Assembly (NCBI GenBank): GCA_038087875.1
Contig: CM075990.1
Span: 9,548,001-9,612,000, forward strand
DNA length: 64,000 nucleotides
DNA from: Malacoraja senta
Taxonomy: Eukaryota
Reading direction: 5' to 3'
Below the pieces are notes generated by a model. The model had not been told where the DNA came from. It saw only the letters and a program-made list of their open reading frames with translations, and searched no databases. Shown in pieces: positions 11,868 through 53,246 of this stretch. Position 1 is the stretch's first letter; each line of letters opens with the position of its first letter. Position numbers and translations under genes: made by a program.

Positions 11868-12040
11868 CTGCAATTTGAACAAAGATAAACAAACTTCAGT
11901 ACAGTTCCACAACTAAGCGCTTCAGAAAATGAAAGACATTGAAATAAAATACTTTAAAAACTGCATCAACCTGGAAATAATTTGCATTGGACTACACAAA
12001 CCTTTTTTATAGTATCATTTAAAGTAAGCCTATTTATATT

Positions 12041-13674
12041 AATAATAATAATAATAATAGATTTTATTTACATAGCGCTTTTCAGGACTCAAAGTCGCTT
12101 GAGAGTCAGGAATAAACAAAACAAAATAGAGCAGTAAGACAGAGGGGAGGGGAACATGGGACTAAGGGTATGCAGAGCTGAAGAGATGGGTCTTGAGGCG
12201 GGACTGGAAGATGGTGAGGGACTCAGAATTTCGGACCGGTTGTGGGAGGGAATTCCAGAGCCTGAGAGCTGCCCTGGAGAAGGCTCTGCTTCCAAAAGTG
12301 CAGAGGTTTGATTTCGGAGTGGAGAGGAGACCAGCTGATGTGGATCTGAGGGACCGTGAGGGTTGGTAGGGGGAGAGGAGGTCAATGAGATAAGGGGGGG
12401 CCAGGTTGTTGAGGGCTTTGTAGGTGAGGACCAGGATTTTGTAGGTGATCCGGTGGGAAATGGGAAGCCAGTGAAGTTCTTTGAGAACTGGGGTGATGTG
12501 GTGCCAGGATTTGGTGTGGGTAATGAGTCAAGCAGCTGCATTCTGGACCAGTTGGAGTCGGTTGATGCTGCTGGAATTGATTCCAAAGAGAAGAGAGTTA
12601 CAGTAGTCCAGTCGGGAGGAGATGAAGGCATGGATGAGTCTTTCAGCAGCGGGGGGTGTGAGAGAGGATCTGATTTTTGCAATGTTGCGGAGGTGAAAAA
12701 ATGATGTGAGGCACAAGGGAGAGGGTTGAGTCAAGGATCACGCCAAGGTTGCGTGCCTGAGGAGATGGGGGGACAGTGGTGCCGTCGATAGTGAGAGTGG
12801 GGTTGTTAATTTTAGTGAGTGTTGATTTGGAGCCAATGAGGAGAAATTCTGTTTTGCTACTGTTTAATTTAAGGAAGTTGAGTTGCATCCAAGATTTGAT
12901 GGCTGATAGGCAGGAGTTGATATGGGAGAGAGGGGGGTGGTGGGGGGACTTGGTGCTGAGATAGATCTGGGTGTCATCAGCATAGCAGTGGAAGACCAGG
13001 TTGAAGTGACGGAGTATATGACCAAGGGGGAGGATGTAGATGATGAAGAGGAGGGGACCAAGAACTGAGCCTTGGGGAACGCCTTGAGTGACAGTGGCTG
13101 TGGCAGAGGTGTGGTTATGGAGAGAGATGAAGTGGGATCGGTTGGAAAGGTAGGAACGGAACCAGCTGAGTGCAGAACCTTCAATGCCAAGGTCCCTAAG
13201 TCTGGTGAGCAGGATGTTGTGGTTGACGGTATCGAAGGCTGAACTCGGGTCGAGGAGGATGAGGATATTGAGGGGGCCAGTGTCAGCAGAGGTAAGGAGG
13301 TCATTGAGGAGAGCAGTTTCTGTGCTATGGAGGGGGCGAAAGCCAGATTGGAGGGGTTCGAATAGGTTATACGCGAGGAGGTGGGAATGAAGTTGTGAAA
13401 CGACGATGCGCTCCAGGGTTTTTGAAAGAAAGGGGAGGTTTGAGATGGGGCGGTAGTTAATGAGAGAGGAGGGATCAAGACCAGGTTTCTTTAAGATTGG
13501 TGTGACAGCAGCAGTTTTGAAAGCAGAGGGGACAATTCCTTGGGACAATGAGTTGAAAAGATTAGTGAGGTAGGGGCAGAGAGCAGGGAGGCAGGACTTC
13601 AGCAGGGGAGTGTGGAGAGGGTCAAGGGAGCAGGTAGTGGGTTTGGAAGTGCTGATGAGTTTGGAGATTTCAGC
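12041..13674 (-). mobile_element. 5'-truncated L2-clade LINE (RT domain, frameshifted)
   Basis: NYRPISNLPFLSK, QSGFR, GVPQGSVLGPLLF, HCYADDTQ, SRLDYCNSLL; 3' tail gaaaagcgctatgtaaat plus (ATT)n; possible TSD atatt at 12036-12040 and 13675-13679. Confidence 0.93.
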
Positions 13675-15561
13675 ATATTGCACCTTTTACATTCACTTCT
13701 TCCTTTTCTGTGCAATTGCTTCCTTACATGTTTAAACAAGTCAGCCATTTTGTTGGTAACAAGATCATTATTTTGGGTGGCATTGTTTAGGGATAACAGG
13801 TAACCAGTATACCATGATAATTTCCAAATTCATCAAATTGTACACTCAAATCATGAACAACCATACTGGACAGAAGGAACCTCAGTTTAACAACTAAACT
13901 GCAAGACCCCACCACTCCTGTACCAAAGTGATAATCGAACGAAACAAGTCCAGTCACGGAAACATAATAAGGCAAAATCAGAATGCAATTTCTTCAAATT
14001 TAAGGGACCAACAATCATGAACTCAATCTCCAAATTTCGTTATAGCAGAATAACTGTGAACTCATAAAAAACCGGAACCCTCGGATTTTACAGCTGTGAC
14101 TACTAACCTTAATGTAAAGTTAATTCATGTTTTCAGTCTGAAAATTCTTAATCTACTCCAAATTTAACTTTAATTAAAGAGTAAAATAAGTGAATTAACT
14201 GCTTCTAAAAAGTGCATGATATACAATTTTGAAATCTCCAAACCAATGTGCTGATCAAGCCACTCCAGCATGGTGTCGCTTACAGTTTTTGGATTCATTT
14301 CAACAGCTGCAGCAGACAAAATGGAATCATCATCACACAGAACTTGAACAAAATATGACTTTTAATTGCTACTTGTATCAGTAGTGCTTCAGAAAGACTG
14401 TGCATTACGTGTTGCTGGGATGATATTTCCTGAGCAAATACCCTATCATTCCCGTTAAATAAATTGATATGTGTTCGATAGCTTGACCTAACAAAACTAT
14501 TTTCTGTGTGGCGAACATGGACTTAATTTTTTCCTTGCCATTAAAAGTTATATTGAACCGATAGCTAAATTTAGAGTGTTTCTGCAGACAAAAAGGGTTT
14601 CTACCCCATAACTGGGGTTCAATGCTTGCCGTTGGCACGTTTAGCAGCTGCCAGTACACAGACATACTCAAATACAGGCAGATCCAATTTCAAAGGTTGA
14701 ATGTGGAAAGAGTGACAAGTTCACAACCGTGTTTCGCTTCAACTGACCTACAGTAGCGCTCCCTGCTCAGAAATAGAACAGAGTACAAGGATGCATTATT
14801 TAAGTTATAAACTCCCAACACTCTAAATGAAATAGAGAGCAAGTGAATTTGCCTGCATTTCTTGTCCCATCAGTCCCAGGACAACCATAGCAACACTGTC
14901 ATGAAACAAATTAACTCATCAATCACTGACAACCTGCAAATCAGACTATTTAAATTACGAGACAATGGGCTCCACATAAAGTTTGGATCCATTTGATTTT
15001 CTAGTTTACTTTCTCTTTTACCTTGTTCATAGCATCGACTGCAGGGTAATGCCAGTAAGGTACCTCCCAGAAAGTCTGCCATGAAGCCAGTATTTATCTG
15101 CACAGAATCATACAATGGTTGCTCTCCAACCAGAGGCTTGAGCTCACTCGAGCTCAGAGAGACGCCATGAGAATGTTCAACAGTTGCTTCAATCCCAGAA
15201 TCTTACCCTGTCAGAAGTCCATTCCAGGTGGAGCCTCTTGAGCTATTTTGAGCTATTTGCTCAAGTTGAGCTATTTGCCACAACTGATTCTCTCCTCCTT
15301 GCTTTTACTTAAAGTAACCACATGCAAAAAGTGACTCGTCAGCTACTCATAATGGGTCTAATTCCTATTTAGAGGGTTCATCCAATCAAGGCTAATGCTA
15401 ACACACATGCTTTTCAATACTTCAGTTACCTCCATCTCAGAGTTAAAGATGCTTTAGTATAATATACACATGATTGCAAACAGAATAAAAAGTAGCACCT
15501 CCGTTTAAAAGGAATATAGTTTGAACATTCCAGGCATTTGGTAGTTTGTAGTGCAGATTAC

Positions 15562-24017: not shown

Positions 24018-24626
24018 AGGCTCTGTCCCACGGGTTTGCGGTCATTGGCGGTGAAGCGCGGCGTCGCCGGAAGAGGAGCCCGCATGGCAACCGCGAGAGC
24101 GCCGCACGGATGCTGCGCGGGGGCCGAGTGATCTCCGCACGGCCGGTTCCACAAGCTTGCGGCGTCGGGTGATGACGACATCACGCAACGCAACGCGTTA
24201 CGCGATGATGTCATCGCGCAACGCGACGCGCTACGCGATGACATCATTTCGGATCGCGGGGCTGTGGTAGTGGTGATCGCGGCACTGTGGCGGCGGCTGT
24301 GGCGGTGCCCGTGCCGCACACGTGCCTCACTGGCGGCGACTGTGGCGTTGCCCTTGCCGCACACGTGCCTCACTGGTGGCGGCTGTGGCAGTGAAAGTTG
24401 GACTCACGGCGCCCGTGCCGCACTCGTGCCTCACTGGCGGCGGCTGTGCGGTAGGAAAAGATATTTCGACATTGTTGGTTTTTTGTGAGCACCGTGCGGT
24501 GTTGGGACCAACGCCGCACGGCCCCGGCAGTGTGCGTTTGACCGAACCCGCAGTCTCTGGCGGTCCACGAGCGGTAGATACTTCCTGTTTCACCACCAAT
24601 GACCGCAAACTCGTGAGACAGGCCTT
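24018..24626. mobile_element. PIF/Harbinger-type MITE, CpG-rich, with internal palindromes and ~40-bp tandem repeats
   Basis: TIR aggctctgtcccacgggtttgcggtcattggcggtgaa / ttcaccaccaatgaccgcaaactcgtgagacaggcctt; TAA TSD at 24015-24017 and 24627-24629. Confidence 0.85.
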
Positions 24627-31512: not shown

Positions 31513-32346
31513 TTCAAGATGGCGGATGTGCAGGAGTGGGCGCCGTTTGTATGGCCGCCTGCCTGCAGTCCGTCCTCTAACTTTTTTATTGTTTAAAACA
31601 TTTTGGAGTCTATTCTTTCTATGTGGGGGGGGGGGGGGGACTGTTTTAACCCCAGTCCTACCTTGGTTGGAGATGCGGTTTTCCTCCAAATCGCATCTCC
31701 GATCTCCCCATGCGGCCTTTCATCAGGCTGGAGCGGCGTTTCCTGCCGGGGGACCACAGCTTCGGCAGCACAGCGCTGGGACACCAACAAGGAGCGGGCG
31801 ATGCCTTGCCGGGTCACCGCTCCGGAGTGCTGTGGCCGCCGACCGCCAACATCGAGCAGCCGCGGTCTGCGGTTTGAGGGCATCCCGCCGCGGGCGGGCG
31901 GCGCTGGATTGGAAGCACCGCGGAGTCGAAGCTCCAACCGGCACGGCCTAAAGTCCACGGGCGTCGCAGTCTCCGGGGAAGGAGCGGCCGCTCCAGACAT
32001 TTCTAAGCTGCTGAGGATTTTTCCACCCGATGCGGGTGTGGCCTATAATCATCGGGCTGCCGTTGTGGCGACTGGCTGCAGTGGCCTCAAACTGGCCCCG
32101 ACCTCGAGTGGACTAGGAGGAGGAGGAGGACTGGACATTTTGGTGCCTTCCCTCACAGTGGAGAGTGTAGATTCTACTGTGGGGGGATGTTCGTGTTGAA
32201 TTTCTTATAGTGTGTTGTGTCATTTTTTTCTACCTCTTTTTATTATTTGTATGGATAGTCTTCCCTGTAAAGCACTTTGGCTTTTGATTGAAATCGACTG
32301 AAAAGTGCTATATAAATACATTTAAAAAAAATAAAAATAAATAAAA
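31513..32346 (+). mobile_element. GC-rich non-autonomous retroposon with L2-type 3' tail
   Basis: Begins aagatggcgg; ends tgtaaagcactttgg...gaaaagtgctatataaat plus A-rich tail; homologous to 49004-49723. Confidence 0.75.
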
Positions 32347-32640
32347 ACCTGAAACTGAATCATGCTGTACAACAGAACCAAAACTGAGTGGTAGTGAAAT
32401 GTTGGTGATTAGCTGATAATTCAACTTTTATCGCTGAACTGCTGCTTCAGCATTATTCTCATACAATAGTACCAAAATGTAAGAAAAGCCCAGATTATAT
32501 TTTGCAGAATATTCAGTAATCAGCCATGAGATGCTGAAAATAATTTGGTCGTATTTCCAAAATTAGGTTGCTTTCGGTATGGTTTGGTCTCATTTTGGCT
32601 GGATTGGAAGCACCGCGGAGTCGAAGCTCCAACCGGCACG

Positions 32641-33002
32641 ACAGATGGCGCAATGGGCTAAGTGTTCGGCTGGCAACCGGAAAGTAGCCGATTCGAATCC
32701 CGCTTGGAGTGCATACTGTCGTTGTGTCCTTGGGCAAGACACTTCACCCACCTTTGCCTGCGTGTGAATGTGTGTGAATGTGTGTGAATGTGTGTGAGTG
32801 ATTGGTGGTGGTCGGAGGGGCCGTAGGCGCAGATTAGCAGCCACGCTTCCGTCAGTCTGCCCCAGGGCAGCTGTGGCTACAGAAGTAGCTCACCACCACC
32901 GAGTGTGACTGAGGAGTGAATGAATAATGCGATGTAAAGCGCCTTGAGTATTAGAAAGGCGCTATATAAATCCCATCCATTATTATTATTATTATTATTA
33001 TT
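32641..33002 (+). mobile_element. Young tRNA-derived CORE/AFC-like SINE with L2 tail
   Basis: A box tggcgcaatgg, B box gattcgaatcc, core gtgtccttgggcaagacactt, tail tgtaaagcgccttgag...gaaaggcgctatataaat(ATT)n. Confidence 0.85.
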
Positions 33003-34140: not shown

Positions 34141-35420
34141 TCCAGCTGTTTAACAATCACTATTTAATACTCTATCCTTCTGGCTTTTCCCCATTAAGGT
34201 ACATAACTTCACATGTATCAATGTTGTGAAGCGCCTGTCATATTTTTGTCAAATCAGCTCATCTAGGAATTTGAGACCTGAAATAGCCCATTATTTTATG
34301 CAAGCAGGACCTAACAAAGTCTCATATTTGTCCCAGAGATATTAGTAAAGTGCATTATTCCTCTACTGTCAGCACAATAAAGGAAGAACATAACCTCAAA
34401 TCTGCATTTCCGCCCTCCCCCCTAACCCCTCCCCCCCCCCCGATAATCTTTTACCCCCTTGTTTATGAAGAATCTATTTCTAAATTTAAAATTTTCAAAG
34501 GATCTCCTTTGGCTTCCGTTTGAGGGAATTCAGTGCTTGGAGAAAGACGTCAACTCTGACTCAAATGAGCAACCTCTGTCTTTCAAACAGTGCAATGAGG
34601 GATAATTGTTTTCAGGGGAGGTTGTACTTAAAGTTGTAGTTTAAACACACTATTTGCGTTGATAGTGAACAGACTGGAATGATCCTAAAGCCAAACACTC
34701 AGTTCAGCAAAATGAGGGATTATTTGAATGTGTATGTTGAATATACTGGTAGGCAGGATGACCTGAACAGGAACCAATAACAGCATATCAAACCGCAGTG
34801 TTTATCCATGTGCATATGCTTCTTTAATTAAAAAAAACAAAGCCATGGTTCACAAGTTCTTGCAGTCTGCTTTATTTTTAACTACTACAACACTAATTGG
34901 ACAATTAATGTCAATGTCAGGGGCGGAGACAAAAATAACTGTGGAACTCAGTTTCAAAAATGTAGTATATGTAATACAATACCGAGCTTGACAATAAACA
35001 ATTCCCTTTGGTAGTTACAAGTATATATGTTAATCACTAAAATAAATTTGAAACATCTCCCAGCTAAAATGACAAAAAATCAATCTTAACAAAGTTGCTC
35101 CTGTGCATCAGCAACTTGAGGTTTTGACCCGAAACATCACCTATCCATGTTCTCCAAAGATGTTGCCTGACCTTCTGTGTTACTCCAGCACTTTGTGACA
35201 CATTGTTAACTGAGACTGAAGAAACCCATGCTCATGCCTTTTTATAATTAAAGCAAGTTTTTTTTATAAAGACAACTGAAGAACCTTACTAAGGATTTGC
35301 CCACGAGGAGCTTCAGCAAAGTATTCAGGCTCATGATAAGCAAAAGAATGTCAAACCAAGGTGCCCACTTGGTTGTCCCCATATATTGTGTTGCCCCCAT
35401 AAATTAACTCGCTAATCAAC

Positions 35421-36176
35421 AATGGTGGCCGACTAGGAAAAGGGGAGATGCAGCGAGACCTGGGTGTCATGGTATACCAGTCATTGAAAGTAGGCATGCA
35501 GGTGCAGCAGGCAGTGAAGAAAGCGAATGGTATGTTAGCTTTCATAGCAAAAGGATTTGAGTATAGGAGCAGGGAGGTTCTACTGCAGTTGTACAGGGTC
35601 TTGGTGAGACCACACCTGGAGTATTGCGTACAGTTTTGGTCTCCAAATCTGAGGAAGGACATTATTGCCATAGAGGGAGTGCAGAGAAGGTTCACCAGAC
35701 TGATTCCTGGGATGTCAGGACTGTCTTATGAAGAAAGACTGGATAGACTTGGTTTATACTCTCTAGAATTTAGGAGATTGAGAGGGGATCTTATAGAAAC
35801 GTACAAAATTCTTAAGGGGTTGGACAGGCTAGATGCAGGAAGATTGCTCCCGATGTTGGGGAAGTCCAGGACAAGGGGTCACAGCTTAAGGGGGGAATCC
35901 TTTAAAACCGAGATGAGAAGAACTTTTTTCACACAGAGAGTGGTGAATCTCTGGAACTCTCTGCCACAGAGGGTAGTTGAGGCCAGTTCATTGGCTATAT
36001 TTAAGAGGGAGTTAGATGTGGCCCTTGTGGCTAAAGGGATCAGAGGGTATGGAGAGAAGGCAGGTACGGGATACTGAGTTGGATGATCAGCCATGATCAT
36101 ATTGAATGGCGGTGCAGGCTCGAAGGGCCGAATGGCCTACTCCTGCACCTAATTTCTATGTTTCTATGTTGCTATG
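35421..36176 (+). mobile_element. Young 5'-truncated CR1 (HER1-like) LINE: RT C-terminus plus 3' UTR
   Basis: 209-aa ORF QRDLGV...LVRPHLEYCVQFWSP...RLRGDLIETYKI...FFTQRVVNLWNSLP; tail gggccgaatggcctactcctgc...(ttctatgt)n. Confidence 0.95.
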
Positions 36177-37159
36177 TGGACATTTTTTAACCCAATTTTA
36201 AATCTTAATTTTTCAGAGAATATTATCACATTCTGAACGAAATATTTAATTCAAATGTCAAGTTCACTGAAACACTGAGAAAATCATCCGTCCCCCACTA
36301 TTCTGTTCAATTCTGATCCTGACATTTTTTCTCATCTCCATTATTTTGCATCCCATAAACACTCTCTAAAGAGAAGATGGATTTCTCAGCTATGCAAGAT
36401 AAAGAAACAGCAATACTAATACACTTGGAGCCCTTTTTTTTTTTTCAAACAATAGAGCCAAGTGTAGTTATTGCAGCATTTCATAATCAAATTCAACCAC
36501 TTACCAAAATGCTGGATTGCCAAAGAGGTATGACTAACAGGAAAGAAAAGGAAGCTATTCAGAAACTTGATAAGCTGACTATTATGCTAAGATATTTATT
36601 TATCATAGCTTGAAAAGCAACAGAAATAGGATCCATTCTTAAATAACCAAATATTACAGACAAATGTTAGTGGGAGGAAATTTCAAATATCAGTTGTCAT
36701 TAAAAAACTTTCTGAATTTCCTCCGAAGTGGCTGAGCTCCAACTTTTAACTATTGTCACTTTAAAAATTCCCCAGCATAAATGGCTAACATGTGCCCACT
36801 GTAATTAATCTTTTTAACATGTTAAACTCAAAGATACAAGAACACAAATTTGTGCGAGATATTTATAAAATAATACATACCTCATTTCTATTATAATTGT
36901 GTCACGTCAAATACAGGGAGGGACAGAAGGAAGGCCCAAAATCACATTATATAGAAACAGCAGGTAGAGGAAAGTGCCTTAATGGGGAAACAAAGTCAGA
37001 AAGTGCAAATAAAATACTTCAGAATAACAAAGCACGAGTCGATCAATCATCAGAATCTATGCCTAGTTCTAAACATCATCCACTCAGAATGTATTTGATA
37101 ATCCTCCTCAAAATCATATGGCTCATTAAGATTATCTTCCATTCTTCAAAACTTCAATA

Positions 37160-49003: not shown

Positions 49004-49723
49004 ATCAATCACAATCACAATCACAATAATACTTTATTAGCCAAGTATGTTTTGCAACATACAAGGAATTTCATTTGCCAAGTCAGTCATACAATAAAAA
49101 GCAACGAACACACATAACACATTTTAACATGAACATCCACCACTGTCACTCCTCCACATTTCTCACTGTGATGGAGGACGAAAAAAAGTTCAATCTCTTC
49201 CATTAGCTCTCTCGCGGTCAGGGGCCTCGAGCCCTCCATTGACGGGACGATCTTGACTCCCGTAGCCGGCAGCGTTTGGGCCCTCCGCGTCGGGGTGATC
49301 AGCTCCTGCATCGGGAGATGTCGGCTTCCCCGCGCCGCCGATCGAACCCCGCGTCGGGGCTGGTTGAACCGTCCACGACATTGGAGCTTTCCGACTCGGC
49401 CTCTCCCAAGACTGTGAGCTCCCAATGTAAAGCTCACAGGCAAGGGATCGACTCCGATGTTAAGTCCACACCCCAGGTGTGCACTCAAGGTCAGTCCGAG
49501 AATGCCTCAAGCTCCATCGATGTTAGGCCGCAGAGCGACCGGAGACACGATCCGAAAAGTAATCGCATCTCTGGCAAGGTAAGAACAGAAAAAAAAAATT
49601 CCCCCGACCCCCACATAAAGCAAACCGGAGAACATTTACACAAACTTTTAACACCCACTAAATGTAAAAAAGATGAAAAAACGGACAGACAGTTGGCGGG
49701 GCTGCCAATCGTGCAGCGCCCCT
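49004..49723 (-). mobile_element. GC-rich non-autonomous retroposon with Rex1/Babar-type tail
   Basis: Homologous to 31513-32346 in the 5' ~220 nt and in the 3' core; tail aaattccttgtatgttgcaaaacatacttggctaataaagtatt(attgtg)n. Confidence 0.75.
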
Positions 49724-51257
49724 GGTAGTGATACGACAGTATCTCCAAATGTGGCTTGGTGTTCATTTTTATCTGATTACATTCTGTGAAGTGCCAAAAT
49801 ATTTTATTCTCCTATGAGTTAAATTAATACAAGTAGTTGTTGAAACCTACCTCACTCATTCACAGTGTTGCTCTAATATGATGCTGATAATAAGATTAAT
49901 TGAACTGGGAAATGTACTCAGAAATATAATGAGTATCAATTAGGACACAGGCAGCAGGGATTAGATGAAATTAAGTTTAAAAATGATCGAACAAAAGCAT
50001 GAACGGTAGTAGATAAATTGGGGCAGTGACAGGTAATGTTGCAGTGAATTAATTTGCAAGACAGATCAATATGTGGTCACCAGCGCAGTTCATAATTAGA
50101 TAAGGCACACAGATTGCACATTCTCAAAATGTTTTCACTCGTTGAAGGATCAATTAAATGGATTATTTTGAGAAGATGAACTAGAGTGAAAAATAAAGGA
50201 ACAATTAAGTATTTTAGAAGCTTGCAAAGCAATAAAAAAAAACCCTCAAGATTACAACATTTATTATGCTCCTCGACAATCTCCTATAACTATTTGTAAA
50301 TTTAGCACAAAATTACAAAGGGCATATTGAAAACATATTTTCTGAGGACTGCTCTCATTTATTGCTAAATATTGTTCCCACAATTAATTACAGATTTGCC
50401 CCACATCTTGTGACGGTACTGGATTTTATTTGTTTTTGGGTAGGGGTAAGGTCACTTTCAATCAGCAGATGGAAAGAAAAGGTCATCCTTTCCTCGGCTG
50501 AATGCTTGACAGAGAATTTGAATATGAGGCATGCAGTTCTGACTATGGGAAAGGTGAGAAGCTCTTCGGACATTGCTTGCTAGCATTTTGGCTTGATCGA
50601 TGGTGACATCACCTGGCTCAGTTAACAGAGTATTATCTGTGGACACAGGCACTGTTCATCCATTGCCATAGTCTCTGAAGGACTGTTCTTTAAATCAGAG
50701 CTTGAACCGAGTTCCTGTCTGCTTGTTGGAATGAGTGGAAATAGTGATATGGGATTTGATATGGGAAAGCACAGCTGCTGAATCCTTGCCAGAGAGCATT
50801 CCCAGTGCTCAGTACTTCATAGAGACTTAAGGCAGAGCAACATGTCTCTTGGTTAAACACTTCGTATGCTTTAGTTTAGTTTAGTTCATTATCACTGAGA
50901 TGTAGTGAAAAGCTTTTGGTGCATGCACATTTTGGCTTTTTGACTAATTTTGCCTGTGCCAACTCTTTGAAAGAAATATCCAATTTATTCCACTTCCTGT
51001 ATTCCATTACCAGAACACTGCATATTTTTCCTTTTCACATATTTGTTCATTTCCCTGTTGTAACTTCTGCTTTCACAAATTTTGCATTGAAAACAATCCT
51101 CCTTTTCTCATTTTTGGGGCCAATTTCTGCAAAAACATCAGATCACATTCTCAAGACATTTATTTTGAGATTAAATAATTTAGTTTCATTTTCATTTTAT
51201 GAATGTCAATCTGCCCTTAGAATGATGGAATTTCCCAAGAACTACTCAGATCAGATA

Positions 51258-51543
51258 GGGGCAGCACAGTGGTGCAGCGGTATTGCTGCTGGGTTTGATC
51301 CCGACTATGGGTGCTGTCTGTATGGAGTTTGTACGTTCTTCCTGTGACCGCGTAGGTTTTCTCAGTGATCTTCGATTTCCACCCACACTCTAAAGACGTA
51401 CAGGTTTGTAGGTTAATTGACAGTATAAGTGTAAATTGTCCTTAGCATGTGTAGGATCGTGTTAATGTCTGTGGATCGCTGGTCGGCTCGGACTCAGTGG
51501 GCAGAAAGGCCTATTTCCGCGCTGTATCTCTAAACAAAACTAA
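51258..51543 (+). mobile_element. V-SINE (HE1-like)
   Basis: Same family as the 25364 and 28025 copies. Confidence 0.85.
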
Positions 51544-51609
51544 TATCACATCCAGTAAAGGAGCAGCCTCGTTAAGCCCCGATCACTGGTATTTTGATAA
51601 GCCCTTCTA

Positions 51610-53246
51610 CGGTGCACTCCATAATGTTTGGGACAAAGAACCATCATTTATTTATTTGCCTCTATACTCCACAATTTGAGATTTGTAATAGAAAAACTCA
51701 CATGTGGTTAAACTGCACATTGTCAGATTATAATAAAGGCCATTTTTATACATTTTGGTTTCACCCTGTAGATATTACAGCAGTGTTTATAGTCCCCCCC
51801 CCGTCCCCCCCCCCATTTCAGGGCACCATAATGTTTGGGAAACAGCAATGTCATGTAAATGAAAGTAGTCATGTTTAGTATTTTGTTGCATATCCTTTGC
51901 ATGCAATGACTGTTTGAAGTCTGCGATTCATGGACATCACCAGTTGCTGGGGGTCTTCTCTGGTGATGCTCTGCCAGGCCTGTAGATTCAAGAATCAAGA
52001 GAGTTTATTGTCATGTGTCCCTGATAGGACAATGACATTCTTGCTTTGCTTCAGCACAACTAGTAGGCATGACTACAGAACAGATCAGTGTGTCCATATA
52101 CCATTGTATAAATATATACACACATGAATAAATAAACTGATAAAGTGCAAATAACAGATAATGGGTTATTAATGTTCAGAGTTTTGTCCGAGCCAAGTTT
52201 AATAACCTGATGGCTGTGGGGAAGTAGCTATTCCTGAACCTGGTCGTTGCAGTCTTCATTATGCTACTACCATCAGCAGTTGTATCATCAATGAAGATAA
52301 GTGAGCCAGTACCTTCAGCAGCCATACATGCCCAGGCCATAACACCCCCACCACCGTGTTTCACAGATGAGGTGGTATGCTTTGGATCTTGGGCAGTTCC
52401 TTCTCTCCTCCATACTTTGTTCTTGCCATCACTCTGATATAAGTTAATCTTCGTCTCATCTGTCCACAAGACATTTTTCCAGAACTGTGGTTGCTCTTTT
52501 AAGTACTTCTTGGCAAACTGTAACCCGGCCATCCTATTTTTGCGGCTAACCAGTGGTTTGTATCTTGCAATGTAGCCTCTGTATTTCTGTTCATGAAGTC
52601 TTCTGCGGACAGTGGTCATAGCAAATCCACACCTAACTCCTGAAGAGTGTTTCTGAACTGTCGGACAGGTGTTTGGTGGTTTTTCTTTATGTCATCAGCT
52701 GTGGAGGTCTTCCTTGGCCTGCCAGTCCCTTTGCGATTAGTAAGCTCACCAGTGCTCTCTTTCTTCTTAATGATGTTCCAAACAGTTGATTTTGGTAAGA
52801 CTAAAGTTTGGCTGATGTCTTTAACAGTTTCATTCTCGTTTCTCAGTCTCATAACGGCTTCTTTGACTTTCATTGGCACAACTTTGGTCCTCATGTTGAT
52901 AAACGGCAATAAAAGTTTCCAATGGTGATGGAAAGACTGGAGGAATAACTAGATGCTGAGAGCTTTCTTATTAAGGAGGCAATTAAACATACCTGAGCAA
53001 TTACAAACACCAGTGAAGCCATGTGTCCCAAACATTATGGTGCCTTGAAATGGGGGGACTATGTATAAACACAGCTGTAATTTCTACATGGCGAAACCAA
53101 AATGTGTAAAAATGGCCTTTAATAAAATTCGGCAATGTGCACTTTAACCACATGTGATTTTTTTCTATTGCAAATCTTAAATTGTGGAGTACAGAGGTAA
53201 ATAAATAAATGATGGATCTTTGTCCCAAACATTATGGAGGCCACTG
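51610..53246 (-). mobile_element. Tc1 (IR/DR type) DNA transposon with defective transposase
   Basis: ~230-bp TIRs containing internal direct repeats (cataatgtttggga), TA TSD; GRPRKT, WKNVLWTDETKINL, VKHGGGGVMAWACM; C-terminus QAWQSITRE...MSMNRRLQTVIACKGYATKY at ~51870-51984. Confidence 0.93.
51985..52258 (-). mobile_element. Rex1/Babar LINE 3' end nested in the Tc1 element
   Basis: KTATTRFRNSYFPTAIRLLN; tail catgacaataaactctcttgattcttgaatc. Confidence 0.85.

What the first reader, a model, noticed from the sequence alone, without database searches (positions are those of the whole stretch)
31513..32346. Non-autonomous retroposon family with shared body but tails from two LINE clades
Seen: this element and the minus-strand element at 49004-49723 are homologous over the 5' ~220 nt (ggcgc.g...tggc.gcc...gtcc...tatgtggggg...taccttg...gagatgcg.tt...atcg..tctccg.tc...tgcggcct..catc...tggagc). 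They also share a 3' core (cc.tcacagtg...gtgg.ggatgttc.tgtt.aa; 32133-32220 vs 49105-49192), with divergent GC-rich middles. One ends in an L2-type tail, the other in a Rex1/Babar-type aataaa plus short-repeat tail. Neither shows a tRNA, 5S or 7SL head or a credible ORF, and this copy starts with a YY1-like AAGATGGCGG. Inference: a possibly uncatalogued Pol II-driven SINE-like superfamily that switches partner LINE by tail exchange.
Basis: partly seen in the sequence, partly recalled or inferred. Interest (0 to 1): 0.75.

Follow-up and report, generated by a model that had tools for sequence, protein, structure and literature searches.

The report
Skate non-coding LINE-dependent retroposon pair
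Two protein-less, GC-rich jumping-gene copies of about 0.8 kb in a skate genome share two conserved, hairpin-forming blocks but end in different LINE-style tails, so they are an unusual long, head-less cousin of SINEs rather than a new class of element, and this scan has met the same family many times before.

Summary
Element A (31514-32347, +) and element B (49004-49741, -) are homologous in two collinear blocks: a 5' block of about 230 nt and a 3' core of about 150 nt. Each block scores 14-17 sd above dinucleotide shuffles. The GC- and CpG-rich middles and the tails show no detectable similarity.

- **Not coding, not Pol III:** neither copy has a tRNA, 5S or 7SL head, any Rfam match, a Pfam domain or protein relatives. 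T6 runs about 70 nt from both 5' ends argue against Pol III transcription.
- **Structure:** each block holds a hairpin that pairs fully in both copies despite substitutions.
- **A's tail:** its stem-loop matches the 3' end of an RT-encoding L2-like LINE in this window (12036-13683, -) and the tail of the neighbouring tRNA-SINE. One stem pair is kept by a compensatory change.
- **B's tail:** hairpin, AATAAA, then (TTGTGA)3. It matches neither that LINE nor the window's CR1. "Rex1/Babar" stays untested.
- **YY1-like box:** present only in A.
- **Extra finding:** an exact 43-nt piece of A is fused to the 5' end of the adjacent L2-tailed SINE, which looks like a template-switch chimera.

Tail exchange on a shared body is already known for SINE superfamilies. 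Copy number, catalogue status and LINE-UTR origin could not be tested, because the reads and contig tools were lost or closed. The scan noted this family in at least 12 other windows.

Verdict: new variant of a known kind.

The parts
31514..32347 (+). Element A, full copy (834 nt): 5' block, GC-rich middle, 3' core, L2-type tail
   Evidence: CpG o/e 0.86 vs 0.42 for the window. RNA MFE z = -5.9.
31516..31525 (+). YY1-like AAGATGGCGG at A's extreme 5' end
   Evidence: Only exact match in the window. Not conserved in B. Function untested.
31514..31745 (+). A 5' conserved block, including a T6 run at 31582-31587 and a G15 run at 31625-31639
   Evidence: SW 29 vs 10.0 +/- 1.3. nhmmer. TRF.
31669..31700 (+). 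Hairpin H1 in A (12-13 bp stem, 6-nt loop)
   Evidence: (I3). All 14 modelled pairs form in both copies, and 6 of them differ between the copies.
31746..32090 (+). A variable middle, 67% GC, CpG o/e 0.96, no detectable homology to B
31903..31945 (+). 43-nt segment of A's middle that recurs exactly at 32598-32640
   Evidence: D1
32091..32254 (+). A 3' conserved core
   Evidence: SW 34 vs 9.5 +/- 1.4. Absent from the last 340 nt of the L2-like LINE.
32148..32187 (+). Hairpin H2 in A (up to 16 pairs)
32255..32347 (+). A tail: L2-type stem-loop (arms 32271-32278 and 32302-32309), TATATAAAT box, A-rich short repeats 32324-32347
   Evidence: SW 17 vs 8.2 +/- 1.1 against the LINE 3' end, 0 of 500 shuffles. 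One G-C to A-U compensatory pair.
49004..49741 (-). Element B, full copy (738 nt)
   Evidence: CpG o/e 0.96. MFE z = -2.6.
49505..49741 (-). B 5' conserved block
49537..49571 (-). Hairpin H1 in B
49231..49504 (-). B variable middle, 62% GC
49096..49230 (-). B 3' conserved core with hairpin H2 (about 49151-49177)
49004..49095 (-). B tail: hairpin (49041-49066), AATAAA (49033-49038), (TTGTGA)n (49006-49027)
   Evidence: No similarity to the L2-like, SINE or CR1 3' ends of the window.
32598..32640 (+). Exact 43-nt copy of A's middle, fused to the 5' end of the tRNA-SINE
   Evidence: The tRNA-like head starts at 32639, which gives a 2-nt overlap.
32639..33002 (+). tRNA-headed SINE with the same L2-type tail as A (context and comparison).
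12036..13683 (-). 5'-truncated L2-like LINE: RT ORF at 12643-13683, 3' stem-loop and (ATT)n at 12036-12100. Candidate partner type for A's tail.

Best explanation
A and B are two distantly related copies of a non-coding, non-autonomous, LINE-dependent retroposon group of a skate genome. The genome is close to Leucoraja erinacea.

Proposed mechanism, with shown and inferred steps marked:
1. Each element is copied through an RNA of about 0.75-0.85 kb. That RNA is made by Pol II, from the element's own 5' end or by read-through (inferred). Pol III would stop at the T6 runs about 70 nt in.
2. The RNA ends in a stem-loop plus short-repeat tail that imitates the 3' end of a stringent-type CR1-group LINE. 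This is shown for A, whose tail is L2-like. For B only the general form is shown.
3. That LINE's reverse transcriptase recognises the tail in trans and inserts the copy by target-primed reverse transcription (inferred from the UnaL2/UnaSINE1 paradigm).
4. The 5' block (hairpin H1) and the 3' core (hairpin H2) are held by selection on the active source copies. The middle drifts or is replaced. This is inferred from the mosaic conservation pattern and the retained pairing.
5. Tails are exchanged at a fixed point just 3' of the core, most likely by RT template switching (inferred). The 43-nt piece of A fused to the neighbouring L2-tailed SINE is the kind of chimera such switching produces.
For: - **Homology:** confined to two collinear blocks at z of about 14-17. 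Middles and tails sit at shuffle level.
- **No coding capacity:**
- **No small-RNA head:**
- **A's tail:** shares its stem-loop and TATATAAAT box with an RT-encoding LINE 3' end and a tRNA-SINE tail in the same window. The stem is kept through a double G-C to A-U change.
- **A's 3' core:** not present in that LINE's last 340 nt, so A is more than a truncated LINE end.
- **Hairpins:** H1 and H2 pair in 100% of cells in both copies, against 29-73% when the partners are slid. Six of the 14 H1 pairs differ between copies and all still pair.
- **Stable folds:** whole-element folds beat shuffles (z -5.9 and -2.6).
- **CpG:** o/e is 0.86-0.96 against 0.42 for the window and 0.31-0.42 for the old LINE fragments. 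This suggests both copies are fairly young although their lineages are old.
- **Chimera:** an exact 43-nt copy sits at the SINE's 5' junction with a 2-nt overlap.
- **Literature:** rays have the highest Rex1 load and also carry L2, CR1 and Zenon (PMC13343379). Tail replacement by template switching is the standard model for SINE superfamilies (PMC4824008).
- **Leads only, not evidence:** other notes of this scan call the family very abundant and describe several tail types.
Against: - There are only two copies in the window, and no further copies could be fetched. Copy number, subfamily structure and multi-copy tails are therefore unverified here.
- No convincing target-site duplications were found for A or B.
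- Covariation evidence rests on two sequences. The shuffle control is uninformative.
- B's partner LINE is unidentified.
- The L2 label of the LINE rests on recalled RT motifs, not on a tree.
- High CpG could instead reflect a lack of methylation.
- The YY1-like box is absent from B.
Confidence: 0.7

Rival explanations
1. The elements are internal-deletion derivatives of autonomous CR1-group LINEs. The 5' block would be a LINE 5' UTR or promoter and the 3' core plus tail a LINE 3' UTR, as in RIME/ingi, NARTc/L1Tc or HAL1/L1.
For: The elements have LINE-type tails, a length of 0.7-0.8 kb and probable Pol II transcription. A YY1-like box sits at A's 5' end as in the L1 5' UTR. SINEBase classes Pol II-transcribed non-autonomous elements with LINEs (PMC3531059).
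Against: A's 3' core is absent from the last 340 nt of the L2-like LINE that shares its tail. A and B share the core yet carry unrelated tails, so at most one of them could be a simple derivative. No remnant of LINE coding sequence was found in the middles.
Confidence: 0.17
2. One reading: an uncatalogued superfamily driven by its own YY1-type internal Pol II promoter, which switches LINE partner by tail exchange.
For: The exact YY1-like 10-mer lies at A's first bases. There is no Pol III head. Early T6 runs occur in both copies. The tails differ and begin at the same junction.
Against: The motif is degenerate in B, and one exact 10-mer in 128 kb of searched strand is not remarkable in itself. 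No expression data could be obtained. Catalogue status could not be tested. Tail exchange is already known for SINE superfamilies (PMC4824008).
Confidence: 0.25
3. The differing tails are one-off accidents. In this reading a heavily 5'-truncated L2 or SINE fragment landed next to A by chance, or the A-B similarity reflects something other than a retroposon, such as a solo LTR or a DNA transposon.
For: Only one copy of each tail type is present in the window. No target-site duplications define the ends.
Against: Homology between A and B stops at the same point, and in both copies a complete hairpin-plus-repeat tail follows at once. No remnant of a B-type tail lies downstream of A. A's tail stem carries a compensatory change. 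There are no terminal inverted repeats and no TG..CA LTR ends. Both elements end in short repeats, as CR1-group retroposons do.
Confidence: 0.06

Closest known systems
SINE superfamilies with a shared central domain and exchangeable LINE tails: CORE-, V- (including HE1 of sharks and rays), Deu- and Meta-SINEs (PMC4824008, PMC11481361)
   Same: They are non-coding, LINE-dependent and modular. Conserved internal domains are kept across families whose 3' tails come from different partner LINEs, and template switching is the proposed route of tail change.
   Different: Those elements have a Pol III head from tRNA or 5S and are mostly 150-400 nt long. A and B are 738-834 nt, have no such head, carry early T-runs, and have two conserved structured blocks that flank a long CpG-rich variable middle.
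UnaSINE1/UnaL2 and other stringent-type SINE-LINE pairs of the L2 clade
   Same: A 3' stem-loop plus short-repeat tail is shared between a non-autonomous element and an RT-encoding LINE. Here A, the neighbouring tRNA-SINE and the L2-like LINE at 12036-13683 share such a tail.
   Different: The tail sequence is not that of the Rfam UnaL2 3' element (no hit at E<=5). Trans-mobilisation is untested.
LINE deletion derivatives and non-autonomous LINEs (RIME, NARTc, HAL1)
   Same: They are Pol II-type, head-less and protein-less elements with a LINE 3' end.
   Different: A's 3' core is not in the matching LINE's 3' region. The shared body carries two unrelated tails. The 5' origin is untested.
SVA of hominids
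   Same: It is a composite, GC-rich, non-coding, Pol II-transcribed retroposon mobilised in trans by a LINE, and it is longer than a SINE.
   Different: SVA uses L1 and a poly(A) tail and is built from Alu, VNTR and HERV-K parts. There is no sequence relation.

Membership tests
SINE sensu SINEBase (PMC3531059) | 5' head derived from tRNA, 5S or 7SL RNA (at least 60% identity over at least 60 nt), or proven Pol III transcription | tested here: not met
   ARAGORN finds 0 genes. Rfam finds nothing at gathering score or at E<=5 in A or B. T6 runs lie about 70 nt from both 5' ends.
SINE sensu SINEBase (PMC3531059) | Length under 700 bp | tested here: not met
   A is 834 nt and B is 738 nt.
SINE sensu SINEBase (PMC3531059) | At least 100 interspersed copies per genome | not testable with these tools
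   The window holds two copies. Collection scans gave only chance matches.
SINE-like superfamily with conserved domain and swapped tails | Conserved internal domain shared by elements with different LINE-derived tails | tested here: met
   Two blocks score at z of about 14-17 while the tails sit at shuffle level. The tails start at the same junction.
SINE-like superfamily with conserved domain and swapped tails | Identity of the domain with a catalogued one (CORE, V, Deu, Ceph, Meta, alpha, beta) | not tested
   No SINEBase, Dfam or Repbase library was available.
L2-clade-dependent retroposon (element A) | 3' terminal stem-loop and repeat tail shared with an RT-encoding L2 LINE of the same genome | tested here: met
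   A's tail against the LINE 3' end scores SW 17 vs 8.2 +/- 1.1, exceeded by 0 of 500 shuffles. The 8-bp stem is shared and carries a compensatory pair. The LINE has an RVT_1 ORF. The L2 clade label rests on recalled RT motifs, not on a phylogeny.
Rex1/Babar-dependent retroposon (element B) | 3' end homologous to a Rex1 3' UTR followed by oligonucleotide repeats (PMC6274825) | tested here: inconclusive
   The form fits: hairpin, AATAAA, (TTGTGA)3. No Rex1 sequence was available for comparison. The tail matches neither the L2-like nor the CR1 3' end in the window.
LINE deletion derivative (RIME/HAL1 type) | Both ends collinear with the parent LINE's 5' and 3' UTRs | tested here: inconclusive
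   At the 3' end only the terminal stem-loop region of about 50 nt matches, and the 3' core is absent from the LINE's last 340 nt. The 5' end is untestable because both LINE copies in the window are 5'-truncated.
L1-type YY1-dependent internal Pol II promoter | Conserved YY1 box at the extreme 5' end that directs initiation | tested here: inconclusive
   An exact AAGATGGCGG is present in A only. It is degenerate in B. No expression data were obtained.
Processed pseudogene / poly(A) retrocopy | Pure poly(A) tail and long target-site duplications | tested here: not met
   The tails are a hairpin plus short repeats. No clear target-site duplications were found.

The most novel reading that the evidence does not exclude
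A and B represent an uncatalogued, Pol II-transcribed, structured-RNA retroposon superfamily of batoids. It would survive by moving its conserved 5' and 3' modules between L2-, Rex1- and other CR1-group partners through RT template switching. The 43-nt piece of A fused to an L2-tailed SINE would be a preserved by-product of that process.
Probability: 0.2. Interest if true: 0.6.

Novelty: new variant of a known kind. Interest (0 to 1): 0.35.

Why it matters
If the family is as abundant as other notes of this scan suggest, it is a sizeable and probably poorly annotated part of skate genomes.

It would also be a natural test case for three questions:
- How CR1-group LINE enzymes choose RNA templates.
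- What conserved internal RNA modules do for a parasite of LINEs.
- How tails are exchanged between partners.

For genome annotation, its CpG-rich bodies could be mistaken for CpG islands or for conserved non-coding RNAs. It does not open a new class of mobile element.

Tried and rejected
- **Read laying:** No read or contig depth was obtained.
- **The look-up of encoding contigs:** I had planned to harvest Leucoraja erinacea loci through CR1-derived proteins P0123, P0125 and P0163, found. That plan failed.
- **Pattern scans:** scans for the H1 hairpin in metagenome, viral and prokaryote genome collections gave 62, 1 and 42 loci. The 62 metagenome loci showed no homology to A or B by blastn. 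The viral and prokaryote loci were not aligned. The genome loci are bacterial by their record titles, so I take them as chance matches.
- **Protein route:** A's 198-aa ORF has no relatives and no Pfam domain.
- **Further copies in the window:** nhmmer profiles of both blocks find none. The weak hit at 51776-51863 is a Tc1/mariner end.
- **Target-site duplications:** none convincing.
- **Rfam at E<=5:** nothing for the heads or the tails, including no UnaL2 3' element.
- **Literature:** no description of this family was found.
- **Rejected readings:** solo LTR, DNA transposon or MITE, Penelope-like element or retrozyme, and processed pseudogene. The ends and tails do not fit, and there are no inverted termini and no hammerhead.
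- **Host gene:** I did not work out its structure or orientation around A and B.

Full report
**What is there**

Element A lies at 31514-32347 on the + strand and element B at 49004-49741 on the - strand. The window is 41% G+C with no N. CR1-derived ORFs in it are 93% identical to annotated Leucoraja erinacea proteins, so the genome is a skate or a close relative. Earlier notes of this scan say the same.

**Check of the observation**

- MAFFT aligns A and B end to end.
- blastn with +1/-1 scoring gives two collinear same-strand HSPs. One lies in the 5' part (66% over 107 nt, E 3e-8) and one in the 3' part (68% over 144 nt, E 2e-10).
- I cut both elements into four segments and compared each with 200 dinucleotide shuffles:

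| Segment | Observed score | Shuffles (mean +/- sd) |
|---|---|---|
| 5' block | 29 | 10.0 +/- 1.3 |
| 3' core | 34 | 9.5 +/- 1.4 |
| Middle | 12 | 11.0 +/- 1.5 |
| Tail | 10 | 9.3 +/- 1.5 |

- The reverse-complement control sits at shuffle level.
- Identity over the whole blocks is 58% and 61%.
- Two small corrections apply. The core is also wider than stated, at 32094-32254 vs 49226-49096.

**What it is not**

- There is no tRNA.
- There is no Rfam family at gathering score or at E<=5 in either element.
- The longest ORFs (198 aa in A, 133-150 aa in B) have no Pfam domain and no relatives in the word search. They read the shared core in different frames.
- There are no terminal inverted repeats.
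- Both copies carry T6 runs about 70 nt from the 5' end. By the established behaviour of Pol III at T-runs, this makes a full-length Pol III transcript implausible.
- By the SINEBase definition (under 700 bp, Pol III head; PMC3531059) these are not SINEs. That scheme would call them non-autonomous LINE-type retroposons.

**Structure**

- Block 1 holds hairpin H1 (31669-31700; B 49537-49571). A pattern written from both copies matches only these two sites in the window.
- All 14 modelled H1 pairs form in both copies. Six of the pairs differ between the copies: five by wobble-compatible single changes and one by a double change. Only 29-43% of cells pair when the partners are slid.
- Block 2 holds hairpin H2 (32148-32187; B about 49151-49177). 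All 9 shared pairs are kept, and the loop is lengthened in A.
- With two sequences the shuffle control has no power. This evidence is compatible with selection for pairing and suggests it, but it is not proof.
- Whole-element folds are more stable than shuffles (z -5.9 for A and -2.6 for B).

**Tails**

- *A's tail.* The last 90 nt or so of A contain an 8-bp stem, a TATATAAAT box and A-rich short repeats.
- The same stem-loop and box occur at the 3' end of a 5'-truncated LINE at 12036-13683 (-). That LINE still encodes an RVT_1 domain (E 7e-38).
- They also occur in the tail of the tRNA-headed SINE at 32639-33002.
- Local alignment of A's tail to the LINE end scores 17 against 8.2 +/- 1.1, and to the SINE tail 14 against 7.4 +/- 1.2. 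In both cases 0 of 500 shuffles reach the observed score.
- In A one stem pair has changed on both sides (G-C to A-U) and still pairs.
- A's 3' core is not found in the LINE's last 340 nt (9 against 9.2). A therefore borrows only the terminal recognition module.
- *The LINE's clade.* I call it L2-like from recalled RT motifs in its translation. Its best protein match is a turbot sequence at 83% identity. That fits the ray-teleost L2 transfers reported in PMC13343379. I did not make a tree.
- *B's tail.* It is a different hairpin (49041-49066), then AATAAA, then (TTGTGA)3.
- It matches neither the L2-like end, nor the SINE tail, nor the CR1 end at 35409-36177 with its (TTTCTATG)n tail.
- Its form fits the description of Rex1 as a conserved 3' UTR followed by an oligonucleotide repeat (PMC6274825), and rays have the highest Rex1 load among vertebrates (PMC13343379). 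The form is shared by the whole CR1 group, however, so the Rex1/Babar label stays untested.

**Age**

CpG observed/expected is 0.86 in A and 0.96 in B. It is 0.42 for the window, 0.42 for the L2-like fragment and 0.31 for the CR1 fragment. I infer that both copies are fairly recent insertions from lineages that separated long ago. On that reading the mosaic of conserved blocks and unalignable middles reflects constraint, or module replacement, in the source elements rather than decay after insertion. Absence of methylation is an alternative explanation.

**A chimera next door**

- An exact 43-nt copy of A's middle (31903-31945) lies at 32598-32640.
- It ends where the tRNA-like head of the adjacent SINE begins. 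The weak Rfam tRNA match starts at 32639, which gives a 2-nt overlap.
- That SINE has the same L2-type tail as A.
- The simplest reading is that the enzyme copying the SINE RNA reached its 5' end and jumped by microhomology. The new template would be an A-type RNA, a local transcript containing A, or the nearby DNA during repair. It copied 43 nt before joining the chromosome.
- This is the kind of event proposed for tail and module exchange among SINEs (PMC4824008, citing Buzdin et al. 2003).
- It is one case, and I could not tell the RNA route from the DNA route.

**Mechanism and rivals**

- *Best reading (0.7).* This is a LINE-dependent, non-coding retroposon group. Its tail mimics a stringent CR1-group LINE. 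Its two structured modules are under selection, and its tails are swapped by template switching.
- *Deletion derivatives of LINEs (0.17).* This rival remains open because no full-length LINE could be examined.
- *An own YY1-type Pol II promoter (0.25).* It rests on a single 10-mer in A that B lacks.
- *Tails as accidental adjacent insertions (0.06).* This is unlikely. The junction is common to both copies, no second tail lies downstream, and the stem carries a compensatory change.

**Limits**

- Pattern scans of the public collections gave no relatives. The metagenome loci failed a blastn check, and the others I take as chance matches.
- Copy number, tail subfamilies, taxonomic spread, expression and catalogue status are therefore untested here.

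**Earlier notes of this scan**

The scan has noted this family in at least 12 other windows of the same genome. Three follow-ups called it a very abundant LINE-dependent family and a variant of a known kind. I treat these as leads. My independent in-window tests agree with them.

**Verdict**

This is a new variant of a known kind, of moderate interest.

Noticed in passing
window 32598-32640 (source 31903-31945): An exact 43-nt direct copy of A's GC-rich middle is fused, with a 2-nt overlap, to the 5' end of a full-length L2-tailed tRNA-SINE. It is a candidate RT template-switch chimera or templated filler at the insertion junction.
   Followed up: partly
window 12036-13683 (-): A 5'-truncated L2-like LINE has a 346-aa RT ORF that is 83% identical to a turbot (Scophthalmus maximus) protein. 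That is far closer than the skate-teleost distance predicts. It fits the ray-teleost horizontal transfers of L2 and Rex1 reported in PMC13343379.
   Followed up: partly
window 35409-36177 (+): A CR1 fragment ends in a GC hairpin and (TTTCTATG)3. Its C-terminal ORF is 93-96% identical to Leucoraja erinacea and ENA proteins, and it has relatives in Mobula, Hypanus, Pristis and sharks.
   Followed up: partly
window 32639-33002 (+): A tRNA-headed SINE with an internal 10-nt repeat array and an L2-type tail ending in (ATT)8.
   Followed up: partly
window 51100-52620 (-): A Tc1/mariner remnant (HTH_Tnp_Tc3_2 hit in ORF 52176-52619) with G-rich runs near its end. These runs caused a spurious weak nhmmer hit to A's G15 region.
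   Followed up: partly
window 24171-24435: GC-rich 33-bp and 43-bp minisatellite arrays (TRF scores 109 and 177). Their nature was not examined.
   Followed up: no
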